Shown here: piece after piece, positions 31,480-63,430 of the stretch
Numbering within the stretch: the stretch's first letter is position 1
How the letters are laid out: the number at the start of each line of letters is the position of its first letter
NCBI RefSeq assembly: GCF_030028105.1
Contig: NC_092392.1
Span: 23,018,613 to 23,082,612, forward strand
DNA: 64,000 nucleotides
Source of the DNA: Mobula birostris
Lineage: Eukaryota
Direction: 5' to 3'
Program-made: the position numbers and the translations under genes
The notes under the pieces: model-generated
What the model was told of the DNA's origin: nothing
The model's input: only the letters and a program-made list of their open reading frames with translations
The model's database searches: none

Positions 31480-31855
31480 AGTTCTGAAGAGTGAGAGGGA
31501 TTATAAAGAAACAGATAAAGTTATGAAAGGGATACATAAGATAGAGGCAAAAAAATGTGTTTCCACTGGTAAGTGATATTAGAACTAAGAAATATAGCAT
31601 CCAGATTCCGGGGAGTAAATGTAGGAAGGAGATGAGCAAAAACTGCTGTTCCCCGAGAATAGTGAACCTGTGGAATTCTCTACCAAGGGAGGCAGTAGAG
31701 TTTACCTCATTAAATACATTTAAGGCACTGCTAGATAGATTTTTGCATTGGAGAGGAATTAAGGACTAAGGCAGGCATAAGATCAGCCATGATCTTATTG
31801 AATGGTGGAGGAGGCTTGAAAGGCCAGATGGTCTATTCCTGCTCCTATGTTCTTC
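31480..31855 (+). mobile_element. CR1 3' end
   Basis: ORF RIVNLWNSLPREAVE...FKALLDRFL. Confidence 0.85.
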
Positions 31856-32219
31856 TGAACTACAGGACAAGACAATTTGGAGGAAAACAGATTCTGAGCC
31901 TGGAAATTTTATTTTAATCCATTCACAGTAAGGTCAGTGATCATTGTCCATTCCTACCTTATCACTGACTTTGCCAGCACTGATTTGTTCATTCCTGCTT
32001 GTCTCTTGTACTGAGCGGTCTGCATGCCAGTTCAGACATTGTTTGAATGTTAGCCCCCACATCTGATGTGACTTGGACTCAAGTGCGTCTGTGTGGTACT
32101 TCCATATTTTCCATGTGATCACATGGCTTTCTTCCAGCATTCTGGATTCCTCCCACATCCAAAAGATGTGCAGGTTTGTATATTGATTGGCCACTGTAAA
32201 TTGTCCTGAGTGGTACAAT

Positions 32220-32780
32220 AGATAGAGACATTATTGATCCCAAAAGGAAATTGTAGCATTACAAGTGAACAGATATACAAATATACAAATATTTAAAGGG
32301 AAGTAAGAAAGAATAAAAAATAAATTACTCCAAACAGTCTAATAGGAGGGAGACATCACTTCCCCTAGCTATAAGTTGACTCATCACAGAGCCTAATGGC
32401 TGAGAGTAAGAATGACCTCATATAGCGCTCTTTGAAGCAATGCCATTGTCTTAGTCTATTACTAAAAGTGTTCCTCTGTTCAGCCAAGGTGGCAGGCAGA
32501 GAGTGAGAAACACTGTCCAGATGTGCCAGGATTTTCTGTAGGGTCCTTTGTTCTACCACAGCCTCTAGTATGTCTAGTCTGACTCCTAGAACAGAGCCAG
32601 CTTTTCCAATCAGTTTATTGAGCCTCTTGGCAACACTAGTGTTGATGCCATTGTCCTAGCACATCACCGCGTAGAAGGTTGTACTGGTGACAACAGACTG
32701 GCAGAACATGTGAAGGAGAGGCCTGAATACTCCAGAGGACCTCAGTCTCCTGAGGAAGTAGAGACAATGCTGGCCCTTCT
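32220..32780 (-). mobile_element. Rex/Babar-like LINE 3' end (second subfamily)
   Basis: Minus ORF SHSLPATLAEQRNTFSNRLRQ...ERYMRSFLLSAIRL. Confidence 0.75.
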
Positions 32781-33024
32781 TGGAGTGTAATGTGAATGTG
32801 GGAAGAATAGAATGGATGTAGGATTAGCATAAACAATGGTTGACGATAGATGTGGACTCAATGGGCTGAGGAGCCTCTGTTTCTACACTGCTCCTCTTTA
32901 TGCGTCATTGTCTTATCAGCACCTCTGATGCGTATGAAATCCAGTATTTCCTCTCTCAGAGCTCCGTGGACAAACTCTCCAGCAAGTACCAGCAGACTTG
33001 GTAAACAAACTAATTTAATGAAAC

Positions 33025-33377
33025 CTAACAAATATTGATAAGCCTAGATAGAGTGGACATGGAGACGATATTTCCTATTGAGGGAGAGTCTAGGACCAGA
33101 GGGCACAGCCTCAGAATAGCAGGACGTCCCTTTAGAACAGAAATGAGGATGAATTTATTTAGCCAGAAGATGGTAAATTTGGAATTCATTGCCACAGATA
33201 GCTGTGAAGGCCATGCCATTGCCTGTATTTAAAGCAGAGAACGATATCTTCTTGATTAGTAAGGGTGTCAGAAAAATGGGGTTGAGAGGGATAATAAATC
33301 AGTCATAATGGAATAATAGAGCAGACTCAATATACTAACTGACCTAATTCTGCTCCTATGCTTTATGTTCTTATGGT
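33025..33377 (+). mobile_element. CR1 3' end
   Basis: LDRVDMETIFPIEGESRTRGHSLRIAGRPFRTEMR; tail CTTATGGT. Confidence 0.85.
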
Positions 33378-33689
33378 AGCAACAAAACCTGCAACTGAGG
33401 CAACAAGAGAAAGGAGATTATCAGCGCCCACACTGCATTTCTTCGTTTTTTTTTGCTTTGAGCTCACCAGGAAAAACTATATCAAGACGTTCATCACCAT
33501 GGTCTCAGGGTTTTGGACATAAAACACCAAACCTCTTTCTTTTTCTACAGGTGCTGACTCACATGCTGAACCTTTCCAGCATTTTCAGCATCTGCAGGTT
33601 CATTGTGATGCTCACTTACTGCCAGACTTTGGCACTCCAGGTTGCCTGTAAGATAAGGTCATTAGTGTCAGATGGTTCCTTAAGGTTGT

Positions 33690-34720
33690 TATAATAGTGG
33701 GGTGGTAGTAAGGATAAGCTTTGATTACCTATTAAATACTCTCTAAGGCATGTATCTTAGATAGCCTCTGACAATGAAATGCAGATCTTGGTCTTCACAT
33801 TGTGACTTAGTTACTAAGTCTTGTGAAATCGTTTCTACTGACAGAAGATTGGACGAAGGAGGATTATGAGTGCCTTATAATCCGTGGCTTCGGGTGGATG
33901 GGACTCATCAGCCATGGTTGGAAACTTACCTCGGAGAAGATAAAATTCTGAGCTCAAACCTCCACTGCCTCACAGGGAAGGCTTCAAGAGTAAACCCCGA
34001 ACAGAGATCCAGAGCTGGAATCTCCAAGGCACCCCTACGTTGAGTTCAATGTTGACTGTCAACTCCTGCAACGCCAATGCTGTGAGCTTGCAGCGTGAGC
34101 AGCAATTTGCTCTCCATATTGTACTGCCTTACTCGCCTACTGGCTTGCATACCATATAGAGAGCAGGAATGCAAAATCAATAGTTGACACTGACCAAAGG
34201 AAGACCTTGAGTGGCAGATGGGAAATTGTATAGTTGTAATAATGACGTGGTCGAGTGGCCGGCGACTTGGGCCGGCACCCCAAAGGACTTAGTCTGGTGA
34301 GGAGGGTGTGAGAACACCCAGCAGGGCTAAAAAAAAACAAGACCTGACAAAGGATGGATGAGCTCCTTGTGAGCCAACGGCCATCGTCCGTGGAAGAAAT
34401 TAAAGCCTCACCACGTATCTACGAATCGTATGCTATGCACCTAGTTAGAAGAGACATGATGAACTTGGGCGCTGCACCGTGTGCCTGGACCTGCCCAAGG
34501 CCTCCGCCTAAGGAAGGGCCGAGCTCGAAGAAGCGGCCGTGGCTGGAGGCCGACATGGCCTCAGGCTCGAGTTCGGCGGGGGCAGTGGTGGGCAGTGCCA
34601 AGGCGGCCAGCGAGAACAAACTAGAGGAGAGGCTGTACTCGGTGCTGTCGCAAGATCGAAGAAGAAGGAGGTGCATAGCCGCCAACCCTGGATTCGGGAC
34701 GGCACCCACTGACTGACTGA
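33690..34720 (+). mobile_element. Probable RTE-derived non-autonomous element (5' UTR-like part plus short ORF 3' end)
   Basis: 3' end reads VRRDMMNLG/QDRRRRRCIAANP, like RTE C-termini, followed by an (ACTG)n tail at about 34709-34720; hosts the 178-bp insert; 5' boundary uncertain. Confidence 0.55.
34471..34648 (+). pseudogene. ZFTRAF1: Circularly permuted 178-bp fragment of ZFTRAF1/CYHR1 5' coding sequence
   Basis: 34507-34648 encodes [14 protein letters not shown]...[12 protein letters not shown] plus T; 34471-34506 is GC plus [11 protein letters not shown] plus G; joining end to start restores [22 protein letters not shown], which I recognise from vertebrate ZFTRAF1/CYHR1. Confidence 0.88.
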
Positions 34721-34903
34721 TTGAATAATATAATAGATGAGTAACTAGGCAAACACTCAGAGACATCAACTGAAGATCAATGTTCAAAATCCCAGGAGTT
34801 TAAATTTAGTTAATTTAATAAATCTCATGACATTAAAATACTACTAGCAATGGTGAGCGTGAAAATCCTGAATTATTATTAGCACCCAATATCTTCATTA
34901 ATA

Positions 34904-37417
34904 GTAGCATTAGTGCGACCACCTGAGTTGAGTATGATATTTTTGCTGACCAGTTGTCTATTGGTGAGTCCTTAAGTGGCTGTAAAGGCCGATCAGGGAT
35001 TCACATATTCTAGTGCAGTGCGGAAACAAGTGGTGGATGCGGTTAGTGCTGGACCCTTTGGTTGCTCATTCTCTCCTTTTGCAGCTGCCACAAAGTGGAG
35101 GTCTCCATCGTGCAGCGCAGCTCCCTCTTGAATAGATTTCCTCCAGCTGTTTCTATTGAATGCAACGTCTTCAATTTTTAGTTTTTAGATGTAATGTTGA
35201 ATTTCTTCAGGCTGATTTTGACATTATCTTTGAAGTGTTCCCTTTGCCCACCAGGGGCTGCCTGACCTTCCTTCAACTGGGAGTAAAGGATATGTCTGGG
35301 AGAAGTGAGTTAGGCATCTGACTGGCATGACTGGCCCATCAGAGTTGGAGATGTAGTACCACGACAGAGCAACTGTAGGTCTCCACCAGTATGCTGGTGT
35401 TAGTGTGTCTGTCCTTCCAGTTGAAAGTGTTTAGTAAGGTTCTTTGATAGTATTGTTCGAGGATTTTCATGTGTTTACTGTAGGCGGTCCATGATTCAGC
35501 TCCATACAGTAATGCAGGAAAAATATAGAACAAATGTTTTATTTGGACCTGTAGGTCATGGTCTTCAAAAACTCGTTTGCTTAATCTTGCATAGGGTGTA
35601 CCAGCACTCCTTAAGCAGTGGTTGATCTCTGAGTTGATGTCTGCTTTTGAGGAGGGAATGCTGTTAAGGTAGGGTAAGTGGACTAACTTTTCAATGACAA
35701 TATCATCAACTTTTATAAAGTGCTGGACAAACGGCTGTTTGGGTGGTGGCTGATATAGAACATGTGACTTTTTATATTCAAAATAAGACCCGAGATGTAA
35801 TACATACAAATGCTGGTCTGGCCAGGCAGTATCTATAGAAAAGAGTTTCCTGATGAAGGGTCTTGTCTCGAAAAGTCAATTGCTTACTTTTTTCCATCGA
35901 TGTTGCCTGGCCTGCTGAGTTCCTTCAGCATTTTGTGTGTATTACTTTGATTGCCCACATCCGCAGTTTTTCTCTTGTTTATGTTTCTCTTGTTTGTTTG
36001 TTTGTTTTTCTTTTTTTCTTTCTATATTACCATGTATTGCCTTGTACTGCTGCTGCTAACTTAACAAATTCCAAGAAACATGCCGGTGATAATAAACCTG
36101 ATTCTGATTCTGAAGACCCTATATGCCTTGGCAAAGCATTCAGAACACATTGGAGGTCTCCTTCAGAGTGTGCTGTGATGATGTTGTCATCTGCATACTG
36201 AAGCTCCATGATAGTAAAAGCCCGTTTTCCATTCTACACACGATTGGGATCCCCTGTGGTAGGTTTTGACCGATGAGGTGAAGGGTGGCAGCAATAAAGA
36301 TGGCAAATGATGGGCACAATGACACAGCCCTGTTTGACTCCTGTCTTCACAGTGTAGGGGTCTGATTCAGCATCACTGTTGCCGAGTACCGTGGCTAACA
36401 TGCCATCAGGCAGCAGTCTCAATATTCGTAAATATAGGTACTTGCCGGGGCAGCCATTTCTTGATAGTATACTCCAGAGATCTTGGCAGTTTACCGCGTC
36501 AAATGCCTTTGTCAAATCTATGAAAGCTAAGTACAAAGGTTTTCTTTGCTCATGACATTTTTGTGAAGATCATGTCTGTTGCACCTCTGGGTGGATGGAA
36601 ACCACATTGTGGTTCAAGGAGTACTTCTTTAGGTAGCAGAAGGAGTTGGTTGACAAGGATAGGTGCAACCTATTTGCCCTTTGTTAACAGGAGGGAGTTG
36701 CCTCTGTAATTGCCACAATCTGCCTAGTCTTCCTTCTTGAATATGGTCACTGTTAGAGCGCCCCTGATCTCTGAGGGCAGTTGCTCTTTTTTGCAAACCT
36801 TCAGGATCAAGACATGCATGTGGTGCAGGAGTGCTCATTCTCCTTCCTTAAGGGTCTCTGCTGGGATCTCATCAGGACCAGTGGCTCTGTTGTTTTCCAG
36901 GCTCCTGATGGCATCATGGACCTCTTTCATATTGGGAGGTTCACCCATCTCTTCTTTCACAGATCTCCGAAGGATTTGGTTAGTAACCTCTGGTTCAGCA
37001 GTGCTGTTCTGGTTAAGAAGTTCTTGAAACTGCTCTGTCCAACAATTGTTGATATCCCTCCAATCCTTTAGCAAGTTCTTCCCATCCTTTGAGCACATGG
37101 GGCTTAAGCTGAAGTAACTTAGACCACAGACTGCTTTGGTTGGCCTGAAAAGGCCTCTCATGAAACCAGAGTCAGCCAGCCTCTGGATTTTCAGAGCTTT
37201 CTGAATCCAAAAATAATTCTTTAACTCCCTCACCCTGCCAATGTTATTCTACCAGTAACAAAAGGCTTCCCTTGTCTTGGAGATAAGTTGCTCTACCTCA
37301 TGTCATTATTATCAAACCAATCCTGATGTTTTATGGACTTGCACCCAAGGATGTTTTTGCAAGTATCGAGGATAGTGAATTTAAGCAGACCCAAGTGTAC
37401 TGATATCCTTAATTCTT
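34904..37417 (-). mobile_element. 5'-truncated RTE-clade LINE with 10-bp TSD
   Basis: RATGPDEIPAE, AFIDLTKAFDAV, GVKQGCVI, LQYADD, LLYGAESWT and a C-terminal CPHC...GLYSHLRTH motif; TSD TTCATTAATA at 34894-34903 and 37418-37427; appears to sit within an old SINE; nested inserts at about 35765-36112. Confidence 0.92.
35798..35980. mobile_element. Penelope-derived fold-back fragment with hammerhead core
   Basis: Inverted arm, then CTGATGAAGGGTCTTGTCTCGAAA, then the direct arm. Confidence 0.65.
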
Positions 37418-39296
37418 TTCATTAATATCATTTTCATTGTTATCCTTTTGGAAAACCAATCTACCCTCCTTCCCAATCTGGTCTAGTGTGACTCCAGATT
37501 AACAGCATTGTTTTTAACTGTTAAATGAGTTTAACCCTAAACTATCCTTTGAAATAGCCTCCCACTCCAAAGATATGTAGTAAAGGCTAGACTTGCTTTC
37601 ATCCTGCGAAAAATAAATGTCAAAATTGGCAACATTGACTGCAGAACAATGGAGACAATGGTTATTAAATCAACCATCTGAGGTTGTTTTATGTTGCATA
37701 CTGCTTTCAAGTTTTTCCATCCCCATATTCTGCTAGCAATGAGAACTGTCCAATCCATATATTGTATTGCCTGTGACAAAAAAGGTTCCCTGAATCTACT
37801 GTTGATAAACAAATCTAAACTGGTCTATTAGCATAAAGATAATTAGGTTTTGTTTCAATTTGCATAAGATTAAATGTAGAACAGTTTGCCAAATGACTTT
37901 TCCTGCAAGTTTGTGGTCCTTTCCTTGGACTTTGCAGGTTTTAATTTACCAAATCATACTTTTCCCAATTCTGTCTGATTCATTCCAAAGTAACTAAACT
38001 GATAATTCTGTTTTGCAAATTATAAAAGACAACAACTCTTACATCAATGTTGAATGTTGAGCACAAGTGCTCAGGACTTTATCAATATTTCCAGGATTTA
38101 CAGAAAGAACTGAAGTCACTTCATGCCATTTGGCTTAACCACCATAGCAACAAGCAGTTTGGTGGAGGAACTCAGTGGATTGAGCAGCATCAGGGTGGTG
38201 GTGGGGGCGCGGTGAAGACATTGTCCATGTTTCAAGTTGAAACCCTGCATCAAGATTTATCAGTCTCTGATGCCACTAATTTTATTTTAAAATTCTGTAG
38301 ACTTTTTCTGTTAGCAGCTGAGACCCCACCATTAATTCATTGCTACTTAACATGGAATGAGGGGCACATGATTCTCCTCATGGATTGTTACAACAAGATA
38401 ATTTAACAAATCTGGAACTTCTTCATTTTATGCACAACGTTAACCATATCAGTTTCTTAATAAAATCAACTATGTTGTTTCCTATTATGATTACTAAAAC
38501 AAATCTGATATCCTATAAGTTTAATTTTAGATATATTTGTCTCAGTTTCTTTGTTCTTTACATTTCTTTTCATCAGATGTATCTAGAGTATACTTTATGC
38601 CTTTGCACGTTAGTCTTGAACAGTTTTGTAGTTATAACTCTCTTCCACAACCTTACCAATGTAGCTGAACAGAATCTTCACCATACACATGGGATAAAGA
38701 CACAGATTTCTACATAGGTAACAAATAAATCCCCTCTTTGCACCTAGTGCAAATGTCCCCCTCCCAAATAAATATAAATATGTTCTATAAGGTATTAGAA
38801 GTTTTATCATACATGAATAAATAGATTCAAACATTTGACTATGATAAGGCAATGATATTAGTGAACAAACTATTTCCCATGAAATTTACAAGTAATGATG
38901 ATTTGAAATCACAGAGTGCAGCAGTATAAACAACTGGTGTCTATTCAGACAGTATGCAGTGAGAAGTCATTTGGCATAAGCGGTCTGGAAATTGATCACA
39001 TTATTTATTCAATGACTGGTAGCTTAATACATCAGAGCATATAGGTGCAATTGCCAAAGAAAAAGAAATGAGAGGGAGTCGGGGCTAACCTCATGGGTTC
39101 ACGGCAGTCTGTTCAACATGTAACTAAGTGTATCTCCCTTTGAAGGTAGGTACAGGAACATAATTGGCTTTAGAGGAACAACAGTGATCTACTGGAAGAA
39201 TTGAATAGGTCAAGCAGCACCTATTGGAGGAAAGGAACTGCTGACATTTTGAATTGAAACCCTGCATCAGAATTGGTCTATAGACTTTGTTTAGTG

Positions 39297-40724: not shown

Positions 40725-40950
40725 TAATTATTTATAGATACAGCATCGTAAGAGGCCCTTATGGCCCAATAAGTCCATACCACCTATTACACCCATATGA
40801 CCAAATAAACTACTAATCCCTATGTCTTTCAAGTATGGGAAAAACTGGAGCACCTGGAAGAAACCCATATGGTCATGAAGTGAATGTACCAACTCCTTAG
40901 AAACAGCAGCAGGAATTTAATACAAGTCGCTGGCTACTCTACGCCACTGC
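40725..40950 (-). mobile_element. V-SINE/HE1-like SINE
   Basis: GGGAAAAACTGGAGCACCTGGAAGAAACCCAT, reverse of the V domain. Confidence 0.65.
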
Positions 40951-40963
40951 CTCTGTTCAAGGT

Positions 40964-41577
40964 GGGAGGAGAAGATGGCGGCGCGACGCAGCGCGCGCAG
41001 CTCTCCAGTGAAATTATATAGGGGCTGCGGACAATTCTGGTTTGATGGAGACAGACGTGAAAGCGCGGAGAAGCAGCTGGAGAAATTTCTGAAAGGCCGG
41101 TTCGCTGCCGGCGTTACTGGGTGATCGAGAATCTTCTGGAGGAAAGGCCCCAAAATCCCTGGCTTTGCCTGCTGCTGGCGACCGAGGCTGAGGTCAAATC
41201 GTTCGGATAGAGATAGTGCTCGGTACTCAGTGTCGGAGGGCTGATTGGAGGCTCGACGTTTTCGGACGACTCAGAGTCAGACTGTGGTCGGACATAACAT
41301 GTAGAGTTTTCTTCCTTCTCCTGTCTGTGTGAGATGTGGGGCATTCGAGAGACTTTGAACTTTTTTACTGTGTCATGGCCTGTTCTTCATCAAGTTATGG
41401 TATTGTTGTACTGTTGTAACTATATGTTATAATTATGTGGTTTTTGTTAGTTTTTCAGTCTTGGTCTGTCCCGTGTTTTTGTGATATCACACTGCAGGAA
41501 TATTGTATCATTTCTTAATGCATGCATTACTAAATGACAATAAAAGAGGACTACGTGTCCTCGTAATCTAAATCTAA
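40964..41577 (+). mobile_element. Non-autonomous retroposon, CpG-rich 5' end, (ATCTA)n tail
   Basis: GGGAGGAGAAGATGGCGGCGCGACGCAGCG start; collinear with 46463-47114; ends ATGACAATAAAAGAGGACT...AATCTAAATCTAA. Confidence 0.8.
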
Positions 41578-43594: not shown

Positions 43595-45830
43595 GCAAGA
43601 GAAAAACTGTAGGTGCTGTAAATCCAAACAACACAACAAAAAGCTAGAGGAATGCAAAAGGCCAGGCAACATCTATGGAAAAGAGTACAGTCGACATTTC
43701 TAGCTGAGACCCTTCATCAGGACTGGAGAAAGATGAAAAGTCAAAGTACGAAGGTGGGGGTTGAGAGGAGGAACAAGTTAAAGGTAGTAGGTGATAGGTG
43801 AAACCAGGAGGAGGAAAGGTGAAGTAAAGAGCTGGGAAATCGAATGCTGAAAGAGATAAAGGACTGGAGAAGGGAGAGGACAGAAGACTATGGAAGAAAG
43901 AGAAGGGAGAAGAGCACCAGAGGGAGGTGATGAGCAGGTAAGGAAATAAGATGAGAGAGGGAAATGGGAATGGGGATTGGTGAAAGGGGGGGGGGGGGCG
44001 GTGTTATTGGAAATTCGAGAAATTGATCTTCATGCCATCTGGTTTGAGGCTGCCCAGACAGTATACAAGGTGCTGCTCCTCCAACCTGAGTGTTGCCTCA
44101 TCACATTAGTAGAGACCAACATATCGGAATGGGAGCGGGAAGTAGAATTAAAATGGTTAGCCACCGGGAGATTCTGCTTTTTCTGGTGGATGGAACATAG
44201 GTGCTTGGCGAAGCGGTCTCCCAATCTACGTCGGGTTTCATTGATATACAGGAGGTCACTTTGGGAGCACCGGGTACAGTAGATGCCCCAACGGACTCAC
44301 AGTTGAAGTGTTTCCTCAGCTGGAAAGATTGTTTGGAGCTCTGAATGGTAGTGAGGAAAGAGGTGTAGGCACAAGTGTAGCACTTGTTCCACTTGCAAGG
44401 ATAAGTACCAGGAGGGAGGATCAGTGGGGAGGGACGAATGGACAAGAGAGTCGCGTAGGGAGTGATTTTTGCAGAAAGCAGAGAGTGGGGGGGAGGTGGT
44501 TTGGAGGGAAAGATGTGCTTGGTGGTGGGATCCCATTGGAGATGGTGGAAGTACTGAAGAATTAGGTGCTGGGCATGGAAGCTGGTGGGGGTGGTAGGTG
44601 AGGACAAGAGGAACCCTATCCCTGGGGTGGAGGGCAGCATTGATGATTGAAGAAGGAAGGCCCCTTTCTTTGAAGAAGGAGGACATCTCCTTACTTCTGG
44701 AATGGAAAGCCTCATCTTGAGAGCAGATGCAGTAGAGTAAAATGAACTGGCATTTTTACAAATTATAGGGTGGGAAGAGGTATAGCCCAGATAGCTGTGA
44801 AAATCAGTGGGCTTATAAAAGCTCATAAAAGAGCTTAGGAGAGTCAATGGCACCTAATGGTGACTCCTTTGTTTGCATCTTCGCAAACACTTCCATTTCT
44901 ATCTTTAATGTCTCTATTTTTTTCCCTTTCAGGGTTCTTTTGAAGACCCTGACCTAGAGTTACACGCTGACTACAATCGTTACAGGAATGGGACACGCTC
45001 TGGGGGTTTCGCATCTGGGCATTATTTGACATGACAAAGGCGCGGCCTAACAGCTTCACTCACCTTTGGAGGTCCGGGATTTCATGGCTCTGGAGACGGT
45101 GGGATGGAAGGTTGATGTCCGGGCAAGAGATCAGTGTGTCGTGACAGTCAGAAGATCTAAGGCTGTGTGCCCAGAGACCTGAGATCTTTGGGCACAGAGC
45201 TCGGAAAAGGCGACGCAATGGACTTTTAACATCATAAACTAGCGGGTTGTTTGTTACGTCTCCCCTCTCGCTGGAAATGGAGACATCTCTTTCTCCCTTA
45301 TCAGGGACAGAGAGCCTGTGGTGTCGAAATCTGGGTGAATGAGCTGTCTTTGGGGTACTGCAAGTCTGCGTCTTTGCTGTTGCTTGCTGCACACTTGAAT
45401 GCTCAGTGGTTGGTGCTGATGTATTTTTTTGCTGGTGGGGAGAGGGGGAATTGTTGCTTGCTGCCGCTTACATGCGGGATGGAGGAGAGCTGGGAGGGAC
45501 TTTGGGGTTCTAACATTTCACTGTCATTCATTCTTTGGGGCACTCTGCTTTTGTGGATGGATGAGAAGAAAAGCATTTCAGGATGTATATTGTATACATT
45601 TCTCTGATATTAAATGTACCTTTGAAACCTTTGATATTAGTAGACAAGCTGTCTCCAGATAGAGACAGGGAGATCAGGGAAGTGGAGGGAGGTGTCGGAA
45701 ATGGACCTGGTAAATTTAAGGGCAGGGTGGAGGTTGGAAATAAAGTTGATGAAGTCAACGAGCTCAGCATGGGTGCAGGAAGCAGCACCAATACAGCCAT
45801 CAATGTAGCGTAGGAAAAGTTGAGGAGTAT
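43595..45830 (-). mobile_element. Penelope-like element (RT end, GIY-YIG endonuclease region, terminal repeat), interrupted
   Basis: YKPTDFHSYLGYTSSHP; GTYPCKWNKCYTC; GDRFAKHL...LPVANHFNSTSRSHSDM; hammerhead motif at 43687-43726; split by 44823-45633. Confidence 0.9.
44823..45633 (+). mobile_element. Non-autonomous retroposon nested in Penelope
   Basis: Non-coding; related to 18956-19673; tail CCTTTGAAACCTTTGA. Confidence 0.65.
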
Positions 45831-46462
45831 GTAGCCAGTTTGGTTATCACCAATGTTAACAACTAAGCATATGCTTCCTATATCCGCACAATTACATTTG
45901 CTCACTATCTTTTTTGTTATCCGGGAAGCTCTGTCTTTAATTTCCCAACCAATCTCCTTCAGGGAAATGTATAGTATGTGGACTGTCACTGCTAGATCTT
46001 TACATTAATGCTCCCCCATTGTTCAGGTTTAGTTGCCTGCCAGACTTTACTTCCAGTTTACCCAGGCCAGATCTGATCCTGTTCCATTCTAGTGGCCCCT
46101 CTCCAATTGACTGTGTTTTCCTTGGCTTGCTCTTTATCCTTTTCCACAATATATTGATTCCTGCTTTTGAAATCATTCCCCACTGATATTCACTCACTCA
46201 CCTGGCTCATTTCCCAGAAATAAGACCAGCCATTCCACCCTCCAGTAGGTCAGGAGCACACTAGTTGAGGTGGTTTTAGAATCAGAGAATCACGCAGCAC
46301 AGAAACAGGTTCCTCAGCTCCACCCTGGCCATACTGACCATCAACGTACGAATCTCACTTACCAGCACCTGGTCTGTAGCACCAGTCTTATTGATTCAAT
46401 TGTTTGTCTAGATAGTTCTTAAATGTTGTCAGATTCTTTCTACTCTGGCACTGTGCTCTAAA

Positions 46463-47114
46463 GGGAGGAGAAGATGGTGGTGCGACGCAGCGCACGCGGC
46501 CGTTCCGAATGAATACCGTATGTGTTAACTAGGGGGCCGTGCACAATCCTGATTTGATGGAGACAATCATGAGAAGCATGGAGGAACACCTGGAGTAACT
46601 TCTGAAATGCCGTTTCGCTGCCGCTGCAACTGTGCAATCGAGGATCTCCGGAGGGGAGGCCCCAAACCCTCAGCTTTGTCTATTGTCTGTTGCCAGGGCC
46701 GGGGTCGAAGCGCTCGGCAGAGATGGTGCTCGGTGCTCGGTGTCGGAGAGCTGGTCGGAGGCTCGGAGTTTTCGGACAGACTCAGAGTCGGACTGTGGTC
46801 AGATGCTTCCAGTCTGCTGCATCGGCAAGTTTGCGGCGCTGGAGGTTCACCGTCTGCGTGAGATGATGGGACTTTCGAGGGACTTTGAGACTTTTACCGT
46901 GCCATGGTCTGTTCTTATCAAATTACGGTATTGTTTTGCACTGTTGTAACTATATGTTATAGTTATGTGTTTTTTGTTAGTTTTTAAGTCGGTTTGTCAT
47001 GTGTTTCCATGATACCATTCTGGAAAAACATTGTATCATTTCTTAATGCATGCATTACTAAATGACAATAAGAGAGGACTGCGTGTCTTCATAATCTAAT
47101 CTAATCTAGTCTAA
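46463..47114 (+). mobile_element. Second copy of the 40964-41577 non-autonomous retroposon
   Basis: Same start (GGGAGGAGAAGATGGTGG) and (ATCTA)n tail; collinear. Confidence 0.8.
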
Positions 47115-49767: not shown

Positions 49768-52700
49768 GAGTACAGGAATAGAGTGAGGTGGAGGATAAAT
49801 GCATGGCTGAGGGATTGGAGCAGGGGGTAGGGATTCAGATTTCTGGATCATTGGTACCTCTTTTCGGGTAAGAGTGACCTGTACAAAAAGGACAAGTTGC
49901 ACTTGAATACCAGGGGGAACCAATATACTGGTGGGGAGGTTTGCTAAGGCTATTGGGGAGAGTTTAAACTAGGATTGTTGGGGGGTGGGAATCAAACTGA
50001 AGAGACGGAGGAAGAGGCAGTTGGTTCATAAATAGAGAAAGCTTGGAGATAGTGTGAGAGGGAGGATAAGCAGGTGATAGAGAAGGGATGTGCTAGGACT
50101 GATGGCCTGAGATGTGTTGATTTTAATGCAAGGAGTATTATGAACAAAGTGGGTGAGCTTAGAGTGTGGATCAGTACTTGGAGCTCTGATGTTGTGGCTA
50201 TTACAGAGACTCGGATAGCTCAGGGGCAGGAATAGTTACTTCGAGTGCCAGGTTTCAGATGTTTCAGAAAGGACAGGGAGGGAGGCAAAAGAGATGGGGG
50301 CATGGCATTGTTGATCAGAGATAGTATCATAGCTGCAGAAAAGGAGGAAGTCATGGATGGAATATCTACGGAGTCTCTATGGGTAGAAGTTAGGAACAAG
50401 AAGGAGTCAATAACTCGACTGGGTGTTTTTTATAGACCACCCAATAGTAACGGGGACATCGGGGAACAGATAGAGAGACAGGTTCTGGAAAGGTGTAATA
50501 ATAACAGGGTTGTCATGGTGGGAGATTTTAACTTCCCAAATATCGATTGGCATGTCCCTATAGCAAGGGGTTCAGATGGGATAGGGTTTCTTCGATGTGT
50601 TCAAGAAGGATTCTTGACTCAATATATAGATAAGCCTACAAGAAGAGAGGCTGTACTTGATCTGATATTGGGAAATGAACCTGGTCAGGTGTCAGATCTC
50701 TCAATGGGAGAACATTTTGGAGATCGTGATAACAATTCCTTATAACAACTCCTATAGCATTTGAGAGGGATAGGAACAGACAAGTTAGGAAAGTGTTTAA
50801 TTGGAGTAAGGGGAAATATGAACTTATCAGGCAGCAACTTGGAAGCATAAATTGGGAAGAGATGTTCTCAGGGAAATGCACAGAAATGTGGCGAATGTTC
50901 AGGGGATATTTACATGGAGTTCTGCATAGGTACATTCCAATGAGACAGGGAAAGGATGGTAGGGTACAGAACCTTGGTGTACAAAGGCTGTTGTAAATCT
51001 AGTCAAGAAGAAAAGAAGAGCTTACGAAAGGTTAAAAAAACAAGTAATGACAGAGATCTAGAAGCTTATAAGGCTACCAGGAAGGAGCTTAAGAAAGAAA
51101 TTAGGAGAAACAGAGGGGCCATGAGAAGGCCTTGGTAGACAGGATTAAGGAAAATCCCAAGACATTCTACAAGTATGTGAAGAGCAAGAGGATAAGACAT
51201 GAGAGAATAGGACCAATCAAATGTGACAGTGGAAAAGAGTGCATGGAACCGGAGGAGATAGCAGAGGTACTTAATGAGTACATTGCTTCAGAATTCACTA
51301 TGGAAAAGGATCTTGGCAATTGTAGGGATGACTTACAGCGGACTGAAAAGCTTGAGCATGTAGCTATTAAGAAAGAGGATATGCTGGAGCTTTTGGAAAG
51401 CACCAAATTGGATAAGTCACCGGGACCGGACGAGATGTACCCCAGGCGATTGTGGGAGGCGAGGAAGGAGATTGCTCAGCTTCTGCCGATGATCTTTGCA
51501 TCATCAATGGGGACGGGGGAGGTTCCGGAGGATTGGAGGGTTGTGGATGTTGTTCCATTATTCAAGAAAAGGAGTAGAAATAGCCCAGGAAATATGACAG
51601 TGGTTGGTAAGTTGATGGAGAAGATCCTGAGAAGCAGGATTTATGAACATTTGGAGAGGCATTATATGATTAGGAATAGTCACCATGGTTTTGTGAAGGG
51701 CAGGTCGTGCCTTGTGAGCCTGATTGAGTTTTTTGAGGATGTGGCTAAACACATTCATGAAGGTAGAGCAATAGATGTAGTGTCTGTGGATTTCAGCAAG
51801 GCATTTGACAAGGTACCCCATGTAAGGGTTATTGAGAAAATGACGAGGTATGGGATCCAAGGGGACATTGCTTTGTGGACCCAGAACTGGCTTGCCCACA
51901 GAAGGCAAAGAGTGGTTGTAGACCGGTCATATTCTGCATGGACATCGGTCACCAATGGTGTGCCTCAGGGATCTGTTCTGGGACCCCTACTCTTTGTGAT
52001 TTTTATAAATGACCTGGATGAAAAAGTGGAGGATGGGTTAGTAAATTTGCTGATGACACAAAGGTTGGAGATGTTGTGGACAGTGTGGAGGGCTATCAGA
52101 GGTTACAGCTGACATTAATAGGATGCAAAACTGGGCTGAGGAGTGGCAGATGGAGCTCAACCCAGATAAGTGTGATGTGGTTCATTTTGGTAGGTCAAAT
52201 AAGATGACATAATATAATATTAATGGTAAGACTCTTGGCAGTGTGGCGGATCAGAGGGATCTTTGCGTCCGAGTCCATAGGACACTCAAAGCTGCTGCAC
52301 AGGTTGACTCTGTGGTTAAGAAAATATACAGTGCATTGGCCTTCATCAATCGTTGGATTGAGTTTAAGAGCCAAGAGGTAATGTTGCAGCTGCAGAGGAC
52401 CCTGGTCAGACCCAACTTGGAGTATTGTGCTCAGTTCTGGTCTCCTCACTATAGGAAGGATGTGGAAACCATAGAAAGGGTGCAGAGGAAATATACAAGG
52501 ATATTTCCTGGATTGGGGAGCATGCCTTATGAGAATAGGTTGAGTGAACTCGGCCTTTTTTCCTTGGAGCGACGGAGGATGAGAGGTGACCTGATAGATG
52601 TGTATAAGATGATGAGAGGCAATAAACGTATGGATACTCAGAGGCTGAAATGGCTAGCACGAGAGGGCAGAGTTTTAAGGTGCTTGGAAATAGGTACAGA

Positions 52701-52945
52701 GGAAATGTCAGGACTAAGTATTTTATGCAGAGAGTGGTGAGTGCGTGGAATGGGCTGCAGGCGATGGTGGTGGAGGCGGATACGATAGGGTCTTTTCAAA
52801 GACTCCTGGACAGTTACATGGAGCTCAGAAAAATAGAGGGCTATGTGTAAACCTGGGTAATTTCTAAGGTAAGGACATGTTCAGCACAGCTTTGTAGGCC
52901 GAGAGGCTTGTATTGTGCTGTATGTTTTCTATGTTTCTATGTTTC
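49768..52945 (+). mobile_element. Large CR1 LINE (end of ORF1 plus decayed ORF2)
   Basis: EN: GVFYRPPN, VGDFNFPNIDW, LDLILGNE. RT: KSPGPD, QHGF-like [35 protein letters not shown]-terminus LVRPNLEYCAQFWSPHY. (TTCTATGT)n tail. Frameshifted. Confidence 0.95.
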
Positions 52946-62067: not shown

Positions 62068-63430
62068 TATACTCAGTGGCCACTTTATTAGGTACCTAAA
62101 AAAGTGGTCACTGAGTGTATGCTCAAAATCCTGGAAGTCCTGTACTCTTTTCCTAGATGCTGCCTGGCCTGCAGAGTTCCTCCAGCATTTTGTGTGTTGC
62201 TCAGATTTCCAGCATCTGCAGATTTTCTCTTGTTTGTGAATATATGCTTTTGGGTTTTCTACTGTTTGCAGCCTATCCATTTGTGTTCGATGTGTTGTGA
62301 GTTCAGAGATGCTCTTCTGCACAGCACTGTTGTAATGTGTGATTATTTGATTTTCTGTCACCTACCTGTCAGCTTGAACCAGTCTGACCATTCACCTCTG
62401 ACCTCTCTCTCATTAATAAGGCACTTCTGCCCCAAGAGCAGCTGCTTTTATTGTTTTCACACCATTCTTTGTAACCTCTAGAGACTCCTGGGTTAAGATG
62501 GCACTGGTGAAACAAAGTGACGACTTGCTGTCAGCAAACAGAACTACTTTATTAATCACACTGCTTCTGGAAAATAGCCTGCAACTTCCCTTTCAGAGTT
62601 GAGTATTTGAACCTGGCATTTTTGTGGTATAAACTGATGTCTCGAAGGTGCAAGACAGTTGCAGCCTGGCACATACAGACTGAACTGAGGCAGTGGAGAC
62701 TGGGCCCGAGAAAGGGCAATGAGACAATGAGTTGCCATTGCTGGAGCAGACATGGAGCTGAATTGAAGCAGCAGAACTGAGGCAAGCTGCGATGAGTCAT
62801 GGCAGAGTCAAGGTGGCAGGGCCCAGGCCTGAGGGCAAAGAACAAGCCGACGTTTGACCGATTTAAGTGCCAGGCCAGATTGAAAAGGTCAGGGTGTCGG
62901 GGCTGGAGGAGATGGATGGACCGGTATTCAGCTCACTGCTCGGGGAGATTTACTCATCTCTGCGCTGAACTGTGGCTACAGCCTGCAACAAATAGGCTCC
63001 TGGATCGGCTGTGCCCAGCTTCGTGACTGTGGACTCACTTTTGTGAACTTCATTTCTGAATGTTATTTCCTTACTTTTATTGTTTGCACAATTTGTTTTT
63101 TTCTGCACATCGGATGTTTGACAGTCTTTTTTTAATGGGTTTTATTGGATTTCTTTGTTTTATGGCTGTCTGGATTGAGTCAAATCTCAAGGTTGCATAT
63201 AATATACATACTTTGATAATAAATTAACTTTGAACTTTGAAACTGTTGTGCATAAAAAATTCAGGAGATCAGCATTTTCTGAGATACACATACCACCCCA
63301 TCTGACACCAGCAATCATTCCACGGTCAAAATCACTTAGATCACATTTCCTCCCCATTCTGACGTTTGATCTGAACAACAACTGAATCTACATGCTTTTG
63401 TGCATTGGATTGCTGCCACATGATTGGTTG
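62068..63430 (-). mobile_element. Non-autonomous Tc1-derived element with nested inserts
   Basis: Palindromic double TIR at 62066-62121; MGRKCDLSDFDRGMIAG at 63240-63380; Penelope fragment at about 62135-62237 and a retroposon at 62488-63240 inside. Confidence 0.85.
62488..63240 (+). mobile_element. Non-autonomous retroposon with AAGATGGC head and Rex/Babar-type tail
   Basis: TTAAGATGGCAC start; ends TTTGATAATAAATTAACTTTGAACTTTGA, like the LINE tail at 12820-12845. Confidence 0.65.

What the first reader, a model, noticed from the sequence alone, without database searches (positions are those of the whole stretch)
34471..34648. Circularly permuted 178-bp ZFTRAF1/CYHR1 fragment: probable fossil of a reintegrated extrachromosomal microDNA circle
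Seen: a GC-rich island with about 13 CpGs in an AT-rich, CpG-poor window. Segment A (34507-34648) reads [47 protein letters not shown] and ends ...GTG CTG T. Segment B (34471-34506) lies upstream and begins GC TGC ACC GTG TGC CTG GAC CTG CCC AAG GCC TCC G. Joining the end of A to the start of B gives CTG TGC TGC ACC..., restoring [22 protein letters not shown] with no base lost or duplicated. Known (from memory): vertebrate ZFTRAF1/CYHR1 has PKKRLR...[25 protein letters not shown], and microDNAs are enriched for GC-rich genic 5' regions with a roughly nucleosome-sized class. Inference: a 178-bp piece circularised (junction near 34506/34507, apparently mid-codon and not at a splice site), was opened once at a different point and integrated here. 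There is no poly(A) or TSD, so it is not a normal retrocopy. If heritable, this is a rare nucleotide-level record of eccDNA reintegration.
Basis: partly seen in the sequence, partly recalled or inferred. Interest (0 to 1): 0.9.

Follow-up and report, generated by a model that had tools for sequence, protein, structure and literature searches.

The report
Order-swapped host exon piece in retroposon
A 178-base piece that reads like the start of a host zinc-finger gene, with its two halves swapped, is really there, but it sits inside a larger young insertion with a retroposon-type tail, so it most likely arrived as cargo of a jumping gene and not as a free DNA circle.

Summary
Window 34507-34647 and 34470-34508 translate to the two quoted peptides. 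The piece holds 13 CpGs at GC 0.67, and the 142 + 36 bases close one codon when the order is swapped (read).

The CpG-rich island is wider than the 178 bases. CpGs are dense from about 33830 to 34700, with none for 342 bases before and 158 after. The 695 block bases outside the piece have CpG o/e 0.58, against a background median of 0.25. The block ends in (ACTG)3A, the only such run in the 64 kb. So the piece most likely belongs to one young insertion of about 0.4-0.9 kb.

This scan found the same swapped piece before, on other DNA of the same genome. Thirteen notes hold the gene name. Three follow-ups call it cargo of an RTE-like retroposon. I could not test those notes here.

Identity to ZFTRAF1, the parental order, the exon borders, copy number and junction reads therefore stayed unchecked. 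No target-site duplication, LINE coding remnant or ribozyme head was shown here.

Verdict: the swap is real. A free microDNA landing at this site is not supported. Whether the original circle was RNA or DNA stays open.

The parts
34471..34506 (+). Segment B: 36 nt, the downstream part of the host-gene piece, placed first
   Evidence: letters and translation.
34507..34648 (+). Segment A: 142 nt, the upstream part of the host-gene piece, placed second. ATG at 34555-34557 with A at -3 and G at +4. The 48 nt before it are open in frame and may be 5' UTR.
   Evidence: PDB sequences and Pfam gave no match for 34510-34647.
34649..34707 (+). 59-nt stretch between the piece and the tail, not part of the host-gene reading: putative retroposon 3' tip
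   Evidence: CpG o/e 0.84 for 34649-34722. No copy elsewhere in the window. The fold is not better than shuffles (z -1.04). Its origin from an RTE was not tested.
34708..34720 (+). (ACTG)3A microsatellite-like run at the right end of the CpG-rich block: putative non-LTR 3' tail
   Evidence: It is the only run of this unit of 10 nt or more on either strand of the 64 kb. The last CpG is at 34700 and the next at 34858.
33850..34470 (+). Upstream part of the CpG-retaining block: putative body of the carrier element. The true 5' end lies somewhere between about 33830 and 34470. An A9 run at 34329-34337 may divide it.
   Evidence: 33870-34470 has 19 CpGs and o/e 0.52. There is no CpG between 33488 and 33830. 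Stops occur in all frames. No LINE protein match and no Rfam match.
33837..33851 (+). Candidate left copy of a target-site duplication, resembling 34708-34723: not significant
   Evidence: Local alignment score 15; 349 of 500 shuffles reach it.
34961..37233 (-). Older neighbouring LINE on the opposite strand, not part of the feature. Its 3' side faces the block.
   Evidence: RVT_1 E 1.5e-08 for 36237-36536 (-). CpG o/e 0.25. ORFs.

Best explanation
Window ~33850-34722 (+) is one copy of a young non-LTR retroposon, probably 5'-truncated. Other notes of this scan call the element RTE-like. In its 3' region, 74 bp before an (ACTG)n tail, it carries a 178-bp piece of the 5' exon of a host zinc-finger gene (ZFTRAF1/CYHR1 by recollection) with its two halves exactly swapped. 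The piece reached this site by retrotransposition of its carrier. The swap arose once, in an ancestor element. The most likely route (inferred, not shown) is that the element's reverse transcriptase copied its own 3' tip, switched template onto a small circular host RNA, ran one lap until it met its own cDNA, and then switched back. Insertion of a DNA circle into a master copy is the less likely route.
For: Shown here: (1) The CpG-rich zone is about 870 bp wide, not 178 bp. The block flanks without the piece hold 25 CpGs in 695 bp, o/e 0.58, against a background median of 0.25, and 1.7% of 2462 background windows reach 25 CpGs (100-bp profile). CpG-free gaps of 342 bp and 158 bp bound the block. 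(2) The block ends exactly at (ACTG)3A, which is unique in the 64 kb. (3) The host piece is sense on the same strand as that tail, as expected if both were copied from RNA in one cDNA. (4) Four runs of organism C, each of only 108-119 million letters, hold 0.30-0.32 of the sampled words of 33701-35200. If the genome is in the gigabase range (general knowledge for rays, from no call), about a third of that stretch must be multi-copy there. Which third is unknown. Leads not tested here: 13 notes in the same genome describe the same swapped 166-178-bp piece elsewhere. Three follow-ups call it cargo of an RTE-like retroposon, and notes or follow-ups give copy lengths of 233, 286 and 627 letters. 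Those lengths fit a 5'-truncation series ending at 178 + 74 bp. Precedents: 33 mouse pseudogenes with a circRFWD2 back-splice junction, with LTR sequences enriched beside them (PMC4897178, whole text read), and RTE-tailed chimeric SINEs with host-RNA parts (PMC7245038, passages).
Against: No second copy of the flanks, the tip or the piece lies in this window, so I did not show the family itself. The TSD candidate is not significant (349 of 500 shuffles). My eyeballed 'LINE C-terminus' upstream failed its test. phmmer of the 71-aa piece against 1.84 billion proteins gave one hit, a bacterial Ig-repeat protein, and Pfam was blank. Rfam found no ribozyme or small-RNA head. The 3' tip does not fold better than shuffles. 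The A9 run at 34329-34337 may mean the block is two adjacent insertions. Other CpG-rich stretches exist in the window, so a CpG-rich block is not unique evidence.
Confidence: 0.68

Rival explanations
1. One reading: a free 178-bp DNA circle (microDNA) cut out of the host gene's 5' region was opened once and joined into the chromosome at this very site.
For: Exactly one unit with swapped halves and no overlap, as far as the letters show. No poly(A) directly at either edge. From recollection, not from a call: microDNAs are enriched in GC-rich 5' gene regions.
Against: Both flanks are as CpG-rich as the piece, and the block ends in a unique tail-like repeat 74 bp downstream. A circle landing in old CpG-poor DNA would give an island of 178 bp. 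Notes of this scan report many other copies, untested here.
Confidence: 0.08
2. A DNA circle did exist, but it was inserted into the 3' region of a master retroposon copy and was then spread by retrotransposition. This site is one descendant copy.
For: It explains the exact single unit (one cut of a circle) together with the larger block and tail.
Against: It needs a rare hit into a short stretch of an active master copy that leaves it still mobile. The sense orientation of the piece relative to the tail is then a coincidence of 1 in 2. Template switching during reverse transcription places foreign RNA next to the 3' tip without such a hit.
Confidence: 0.12
3. An independent retrocopy of a back-spliced circRNA (or of broken RNA pieces copied in the wrong order) was made at this site by a LINE enzyme, and the flanks are unrelated older DNA.
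For: CircRNA-derived pseudogenes with non-colinear junctions exist (PMC4897178, whole text read).
Against: The same block argument as above. Two follow-up notes place the piece in the first (coding) exon (untested), which does not favour canonical back-splicing. Exactly one lap is not expected from rolling-circle copying.
Confidence: 0.07
4. An assembly chimera, or a chance resemblance that is not ZFTRAF1 at all.
For: No call confirmed the gene identity (blank).
Against: Runs of three organisms from three studies hold 0.30-0.71 of the words of the 1.5-kb stretch. A 59-codon frame with a well-placed ATG is restored by the swap. Independent readers noted the same piece elsewhere (untested).
Confidence: 0.05

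Closest known systems
CircRNA-derived pseudogenes (Dong et al. 2016, Cell Res, PMC4897178; whole text read, supplements closed)
   Same: A host exon sequence in non-colinear order, possibly in many copies (33 for circRFWD2; here only by untested notes), without the poly(A) of normal retrocopies, with retroelement sequence beside it.
   Different: There the junction is a back-splice between whole exons (exon 6 to exon 2) and the flanks are LTRs. Here the unit is 178 nt, said by follow-up notes (untested) to lie in the first exon. The carrier looks like a non-LTR element with a microsatellite tail. Whether the junction is a splice site is unknown.
RTE-tailed chimeric SINEs: snoRTE/PlatSINE1, MeloSINE, bird SINEs with GC-rich heads (as listed in Kojima 2020, PMC7245038; passages read)
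   Same: A host-RNA-derived part joined to an RTE-type 3' tail and moved by the RTE machinery. The chimeric structure is uniform among copies.
   Different: Those carry small RNAs or rRNA ends as a 5' head in normal order. Here the host part is an mRNA exon piece, order-swapped, lying between element body and 3' tip. I tested neither the RTE origin of the tip nor uniformity among copies.
microDNA / eccDNA
   Same: Size class below 400 bp, GC-rich 5' genic origin, and circular permutation expected after a single cut.
   Different: Germline reintegration of such a circle has to my knowledge not been shown at nucleotide level (recollection; no literature search was made for this). Here the flanks argue against direct integration at this site.

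Membership tests
Reintegrated microDNA (free DNA circle inserted at this site) | Exactly one unit of parental sequence, circularly permuted | tested here: inconclusive
   The frame arithmetic and translations fit.
Reintegrated microDNA (free DNA circle inserted at this site) | The unit abuts pre-existing host DNA on both sides, with nothing co-inserted | tested here: not met
   The CpG-retaining block runs from ~33830 to 34722. Flanks without the piece have o/e 0.58 against a background median of 0.25. The block ends at a unique (ACTG)3A.
Reintegrated microDNA (free DNA circle inserted at this site) | Single, site-specific event (one copy in the genome) | not testable with these tools
Notes of this scan report 13 sightings in the same genome, untested.
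CircRNA-derived pseudogene | The non-colinear junction coincides with the splice donor and acceptor of the parent gene | not testable with these tools
   No parent gene model was available. Two follow-up notes place the piece in the first (coding) exon, untested.
Non-LTR (RTE-type) retroposon copy with host cargo | 3' end with a short tandem-repeat tail, and the insertion boundary there | tested here: met
   (ACTG)3A at 34708-34720 is unique in the window. CpG and GC drop directly after it.
Non-LTR (RTE-type) retroposon copy with host cargo | The 3' tip and body are homologous to an autonomous RTE LINE | tested here: inconclusive
   No RTE reference was at hand. The 71-aa upstream piece had no LINE match, Pfam was blank, and there was no in-window relative. 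Only one frame piece was searched widely.
Non-LTR (RTE-type) retroposon copy with host cargo | Target-site duplication | tested here: inconclusive
   Candidate 33837-33851 against 34708-34723; 349 of 500 shuffles score as well.
Non-LTR (RTE-type) retroposon copy with host cargo | Several copies sharing the same chimeric structure | not testable with these tools
   Only notes. The low-coverage runs of organism C holding 0.30-0.32 of the words hint at a multi-copy part.

The most novel reading that the evidence does not exclude
The swap records a small host circle that an active RTE-like retroposon lineage of a ray captured once and then amplified. In the boldest form not excluded, the circle was a microDNA from the gene's 5' end that entered a master copy. 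That would make this family a heritable, many-copy, nucleotide-level record of eccDNA reintegration. In the RNA form, it would be the first record of a LINE reverse transcriptase running exactly one lap on a circular host RNA that was not made by back-splicing.
Probability: 0.3. Interest if true: 0.65.

Novelty: new variant of a known kind. Interest (0 to 1): 0.4.

Why it matters
How circular RNAs or DNAs get back into germline genomes is not understood. The paper that described circRNA-derived pseudogenes calls the mechanism mysterious (PMC4897178). Suppose a retroposon family carries one exact lap of a small host circle directly upstream of its 3' tip. The position of the cargo, the two cargo/element junctions and the parent's exon borders could then tell template switching onto an RNA circle from insertion of a DNA circle. 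For this single locus the result is sobering: it is most likely an ordinary copy of such an element, not a fresh circle integration.

Tried and rejected
Junction support, copy number, the parent gene and exon borders could therefore not be examined.

2. I read LINE C-terminal motifs by eye in 33900-34420. I reject this reading: phmmer of the best 71-aa piece against 1.84 billion proteins gave one hit, a bacterial Ig-repeat protein whose score is inflated by its repeats. Pfam was blank for that piece and for a 57-aa ORF.

3. Target-site duplication: the best candidate is not better than shuffles.

4. Ribozyme or small-RNA head, prompted by notes on ribozyme-headed RTE copies in this genome: Rfam was blank for 32000-34468, and 34508-37500 gave only a chance miRNA match.

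5. Other copies in the window: none by blastn, tblastx or blastn-short.

6. Fold of the 3' tip: z -1.04.

7. Findings look-up by sequence was blank.

8. Papers: 'circularly permuted' + retrotransposon + 'template switching' + 'circular RNA' gave 0 papers. A search by gene name gave 123 papers, of which I saw 12 in the listing, none on gene structure. The first 'snoRTE' search was swamped by unrelated words and was repeated with more terms. Supplements of PMC4897178 are closed; they hold the tables on flanking LTRs and copy lists.

Full report
WHAT IS THERE. The window is vertebrate-like DNA with GC 0.41 and CpG o/e 0.27, without N. It is full of LINE and Penelope-type debris. Positions 34507-34647 translate to the 47-residue peptide quoted, and 34470-34508 to the short Cys-x2-Cys peptide.

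Segment A has 142 nt (47 codons plus one base). Segment B has 36 nt (two bases, 11 codons, one base). A followed by B therefore closes one codon and gives a single frame that starts at a well-placed ATG (34555). In the native order a stop follows the B/A junction. The piece holds 13 CpGs at GC 0.67.

No call of mine confirms it.

I judged read evidence the most decisive test. I also wanted no database search with the piece to come before it. So I asked for runs and then laid four of them on 33301-35300.

From then on I sent neither that part nor its translation to any search. I did not look for the gene in read, contig, sample or protein collections, and I did not build the joined form. As a result, gene identity, parental order, exon borders, copy number and the two host junctions stayed unchecked. 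Segment A alone, beside the part, matched nothing in the PDB sequences or in Pfam. That is uninformative for an N-terminal stretch.

THE ISLAND IS WIDER THAN THE PIECE. CpG positions show no CpG from 33489 to 33829. They are then dense from 33830 to 34700, and absent again until 34858. In 100-bp steps, CpG o/e is 0.34-0.99 in eight of the nine windows from 33801 to 34700 (0.22 in 34101-34200), against 0.0 in 33501-33800 and in 34701-34800.

I took the block without the piece (33850-34470 plus 34649-34722, 695 bp). It has 25 CpGs, GC 0.50 and o/e 0.58. Among 2462 background windows of the same length the median is 7 CpGs and o/e 0.25. Only 1.7% reach 25 CpGs and 2.8% reach o/e 0.55.

In a genome that loses CpGs, a block that still keeps them is younger than its surroundings, and the piece shares that state with about 620 bp on its left and 74 bp on its right. 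A 178-bp circle dropped into old DNA would have given an island of 178 bp. Other CpG-rich stretches exist in the window, so the block is not unique, but its edges are sharp.

THE RIGHT EDGE LOOKS LIKE A NON-LTR TAIL. The block ends in (ACTG)3A at 34708-34720, the only run of this unit of 10 nt or more on either strand of the 64 kb. Non-LTR elements other than mammalian L1 commonly end in such short tandem repeats and carry no poly(A). The hagfish paper describes RTE-type SINE tails with 3' microsatellites (PMC7245038, passages). The host piece is sense on the same strand as this tail, as expected if both were copied from RNA into one cDNA.

WHAT I COULD NOT SHOW.
- No second copy of the flanks, the tip or the piece is in the window.
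- The best target-site-duplication candidate (33837-33851 against 34708-34723) is no better than 349 of 500 shuffles.
- By eye I read LINE C-terminal motifs upstream, and the test failed. phmmer of the best 71-aa piece against 1.84 billion proteins returned one hit, a 1780-aa protein full of bacterial Ig-type domains, matched through its repeats. Pfam was blank. The upstream part has stops in all frames and is probably non-coding.
- Rfam found no ribozyme or small-RNA head on either side.
- The 74-nt tip does not fold better than shuffles.
- An A9 run at 34329-34337 may mean that the block is two neighbouring insertions. The carrier would then be about 0.4 kb, not 0.9 kb.

HINTS OF COPY NUMBER. 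In one search, four runs of organism C, each of only 108-119 million letters, hold 0.30-0.32 of the sampled words of 33701-35200. For a gigabase genome (general knowledge for rays, from no call) a single-copy stretch could not be held at that depth. About a third of the stretch must therefore be multi-copy and nearly identical there. Which third is unknown.

Runs guessed to be RNA hold 0.06-0.09.

WHAT THE SCAN NOTED BEFORE. This scan found the same thing before on other DNA of the same genome. Thirteen notes hold the gene name, and they describe swapped pieces of 166-178 letters. Three follow-ups (s1-145109, s1-145216, s1-145736) conclude that the swap is real but is cargo of an RTE-like retroposon. 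One note or follow-up each speaks of an RTE-like 3' tip (233 letters), a TSD-flanked copy (286 letters) and a 627-base copy. These are unchecked AI notes and I could not test them. The lengths do fit a 5'-truncation series ending at 178 + 74 = 252 bp, and they fit the anatomy I see here. They changed my reading from 'even odds' to cargo.

MECHANISM.
- Shown: the piece lies in a larger young block with a tail-like end.
- Inferred: the block is a retroposon copy that brought the piece here.
- Inferred further: the swap arose once in an ancestor element. Its position directly upstream of the 3' tip is where a reverse transcriptase that has just started on its own RNA would place foreign sequence after a template switch. 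On a small RNA circle the enzyme would meet its own cDNA after exactly one lap. If it cannot displace that cDNA it would jump on, which gives one exact unit.

A DNA circle inserted into a master copy gives the same product but needs a rare hit. I put the RNA route ahead of the DNA route, and neither is tested. The mouse circRFWD2 pseudogenes, 33 copies with a non-colinear junction and LTR sequences enriched beside them, are the nearest precedent. Their authors call the mechanism mysterious (PMC4897178, whole text read; supplements closed).

VERDICT. Confidence in 'cargo of a larger young retroposon-type insertion' is 0.68. The finding is a new variant of a known kind, with interest 0.4.

Noticed in passing
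window 44101-44853 (-): A 250-aa open frame in a CpG-rich stretch (44116-45274). By eye it has a Cys-rich motif like the GIY-YIG end of Penelope-like elements. Pfam was blank.
   Followed up: partly
window 50245-52740 (+): A fairly intact LINE: endonuclease (Exo_endo_phos, E 2.8e-07) and reverse transcriptase (RVT_1, E 1.6e-19) in successive ORFs. It is unrelated at DNA and tblastx level to the block that carries the piece.
   Followed up: partly
window 33025-33240 (+) and 31557-31769 (+): Two copies of the peptide-like tail common in cartilaginous-fish repeats, read by eye in the ORF lists and not tested.
   Followed up: no
window 40820-41381, 46330-47000, 62846-63025, 2480-2726: Further CpG-rich stretches (9 or more CpGs per 178 bp) in a CpG-poor window: other young insertions or true CpG islands. 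Not examined.
   Followed up: no
window 35803-35940 (+): A 27-nt inverted repeat (81% complementary) with a weak, sub-threshold Rfam match to a miRNA precursor family (24.3 bits against gathering 150, E 0.14): most likely chance.
   Followed up: no
window 34354-34716 (+): A 120-aa ATG-started ORF runs through the whole piece in the native order. There is no evidence that it is used.
   Followed up: no
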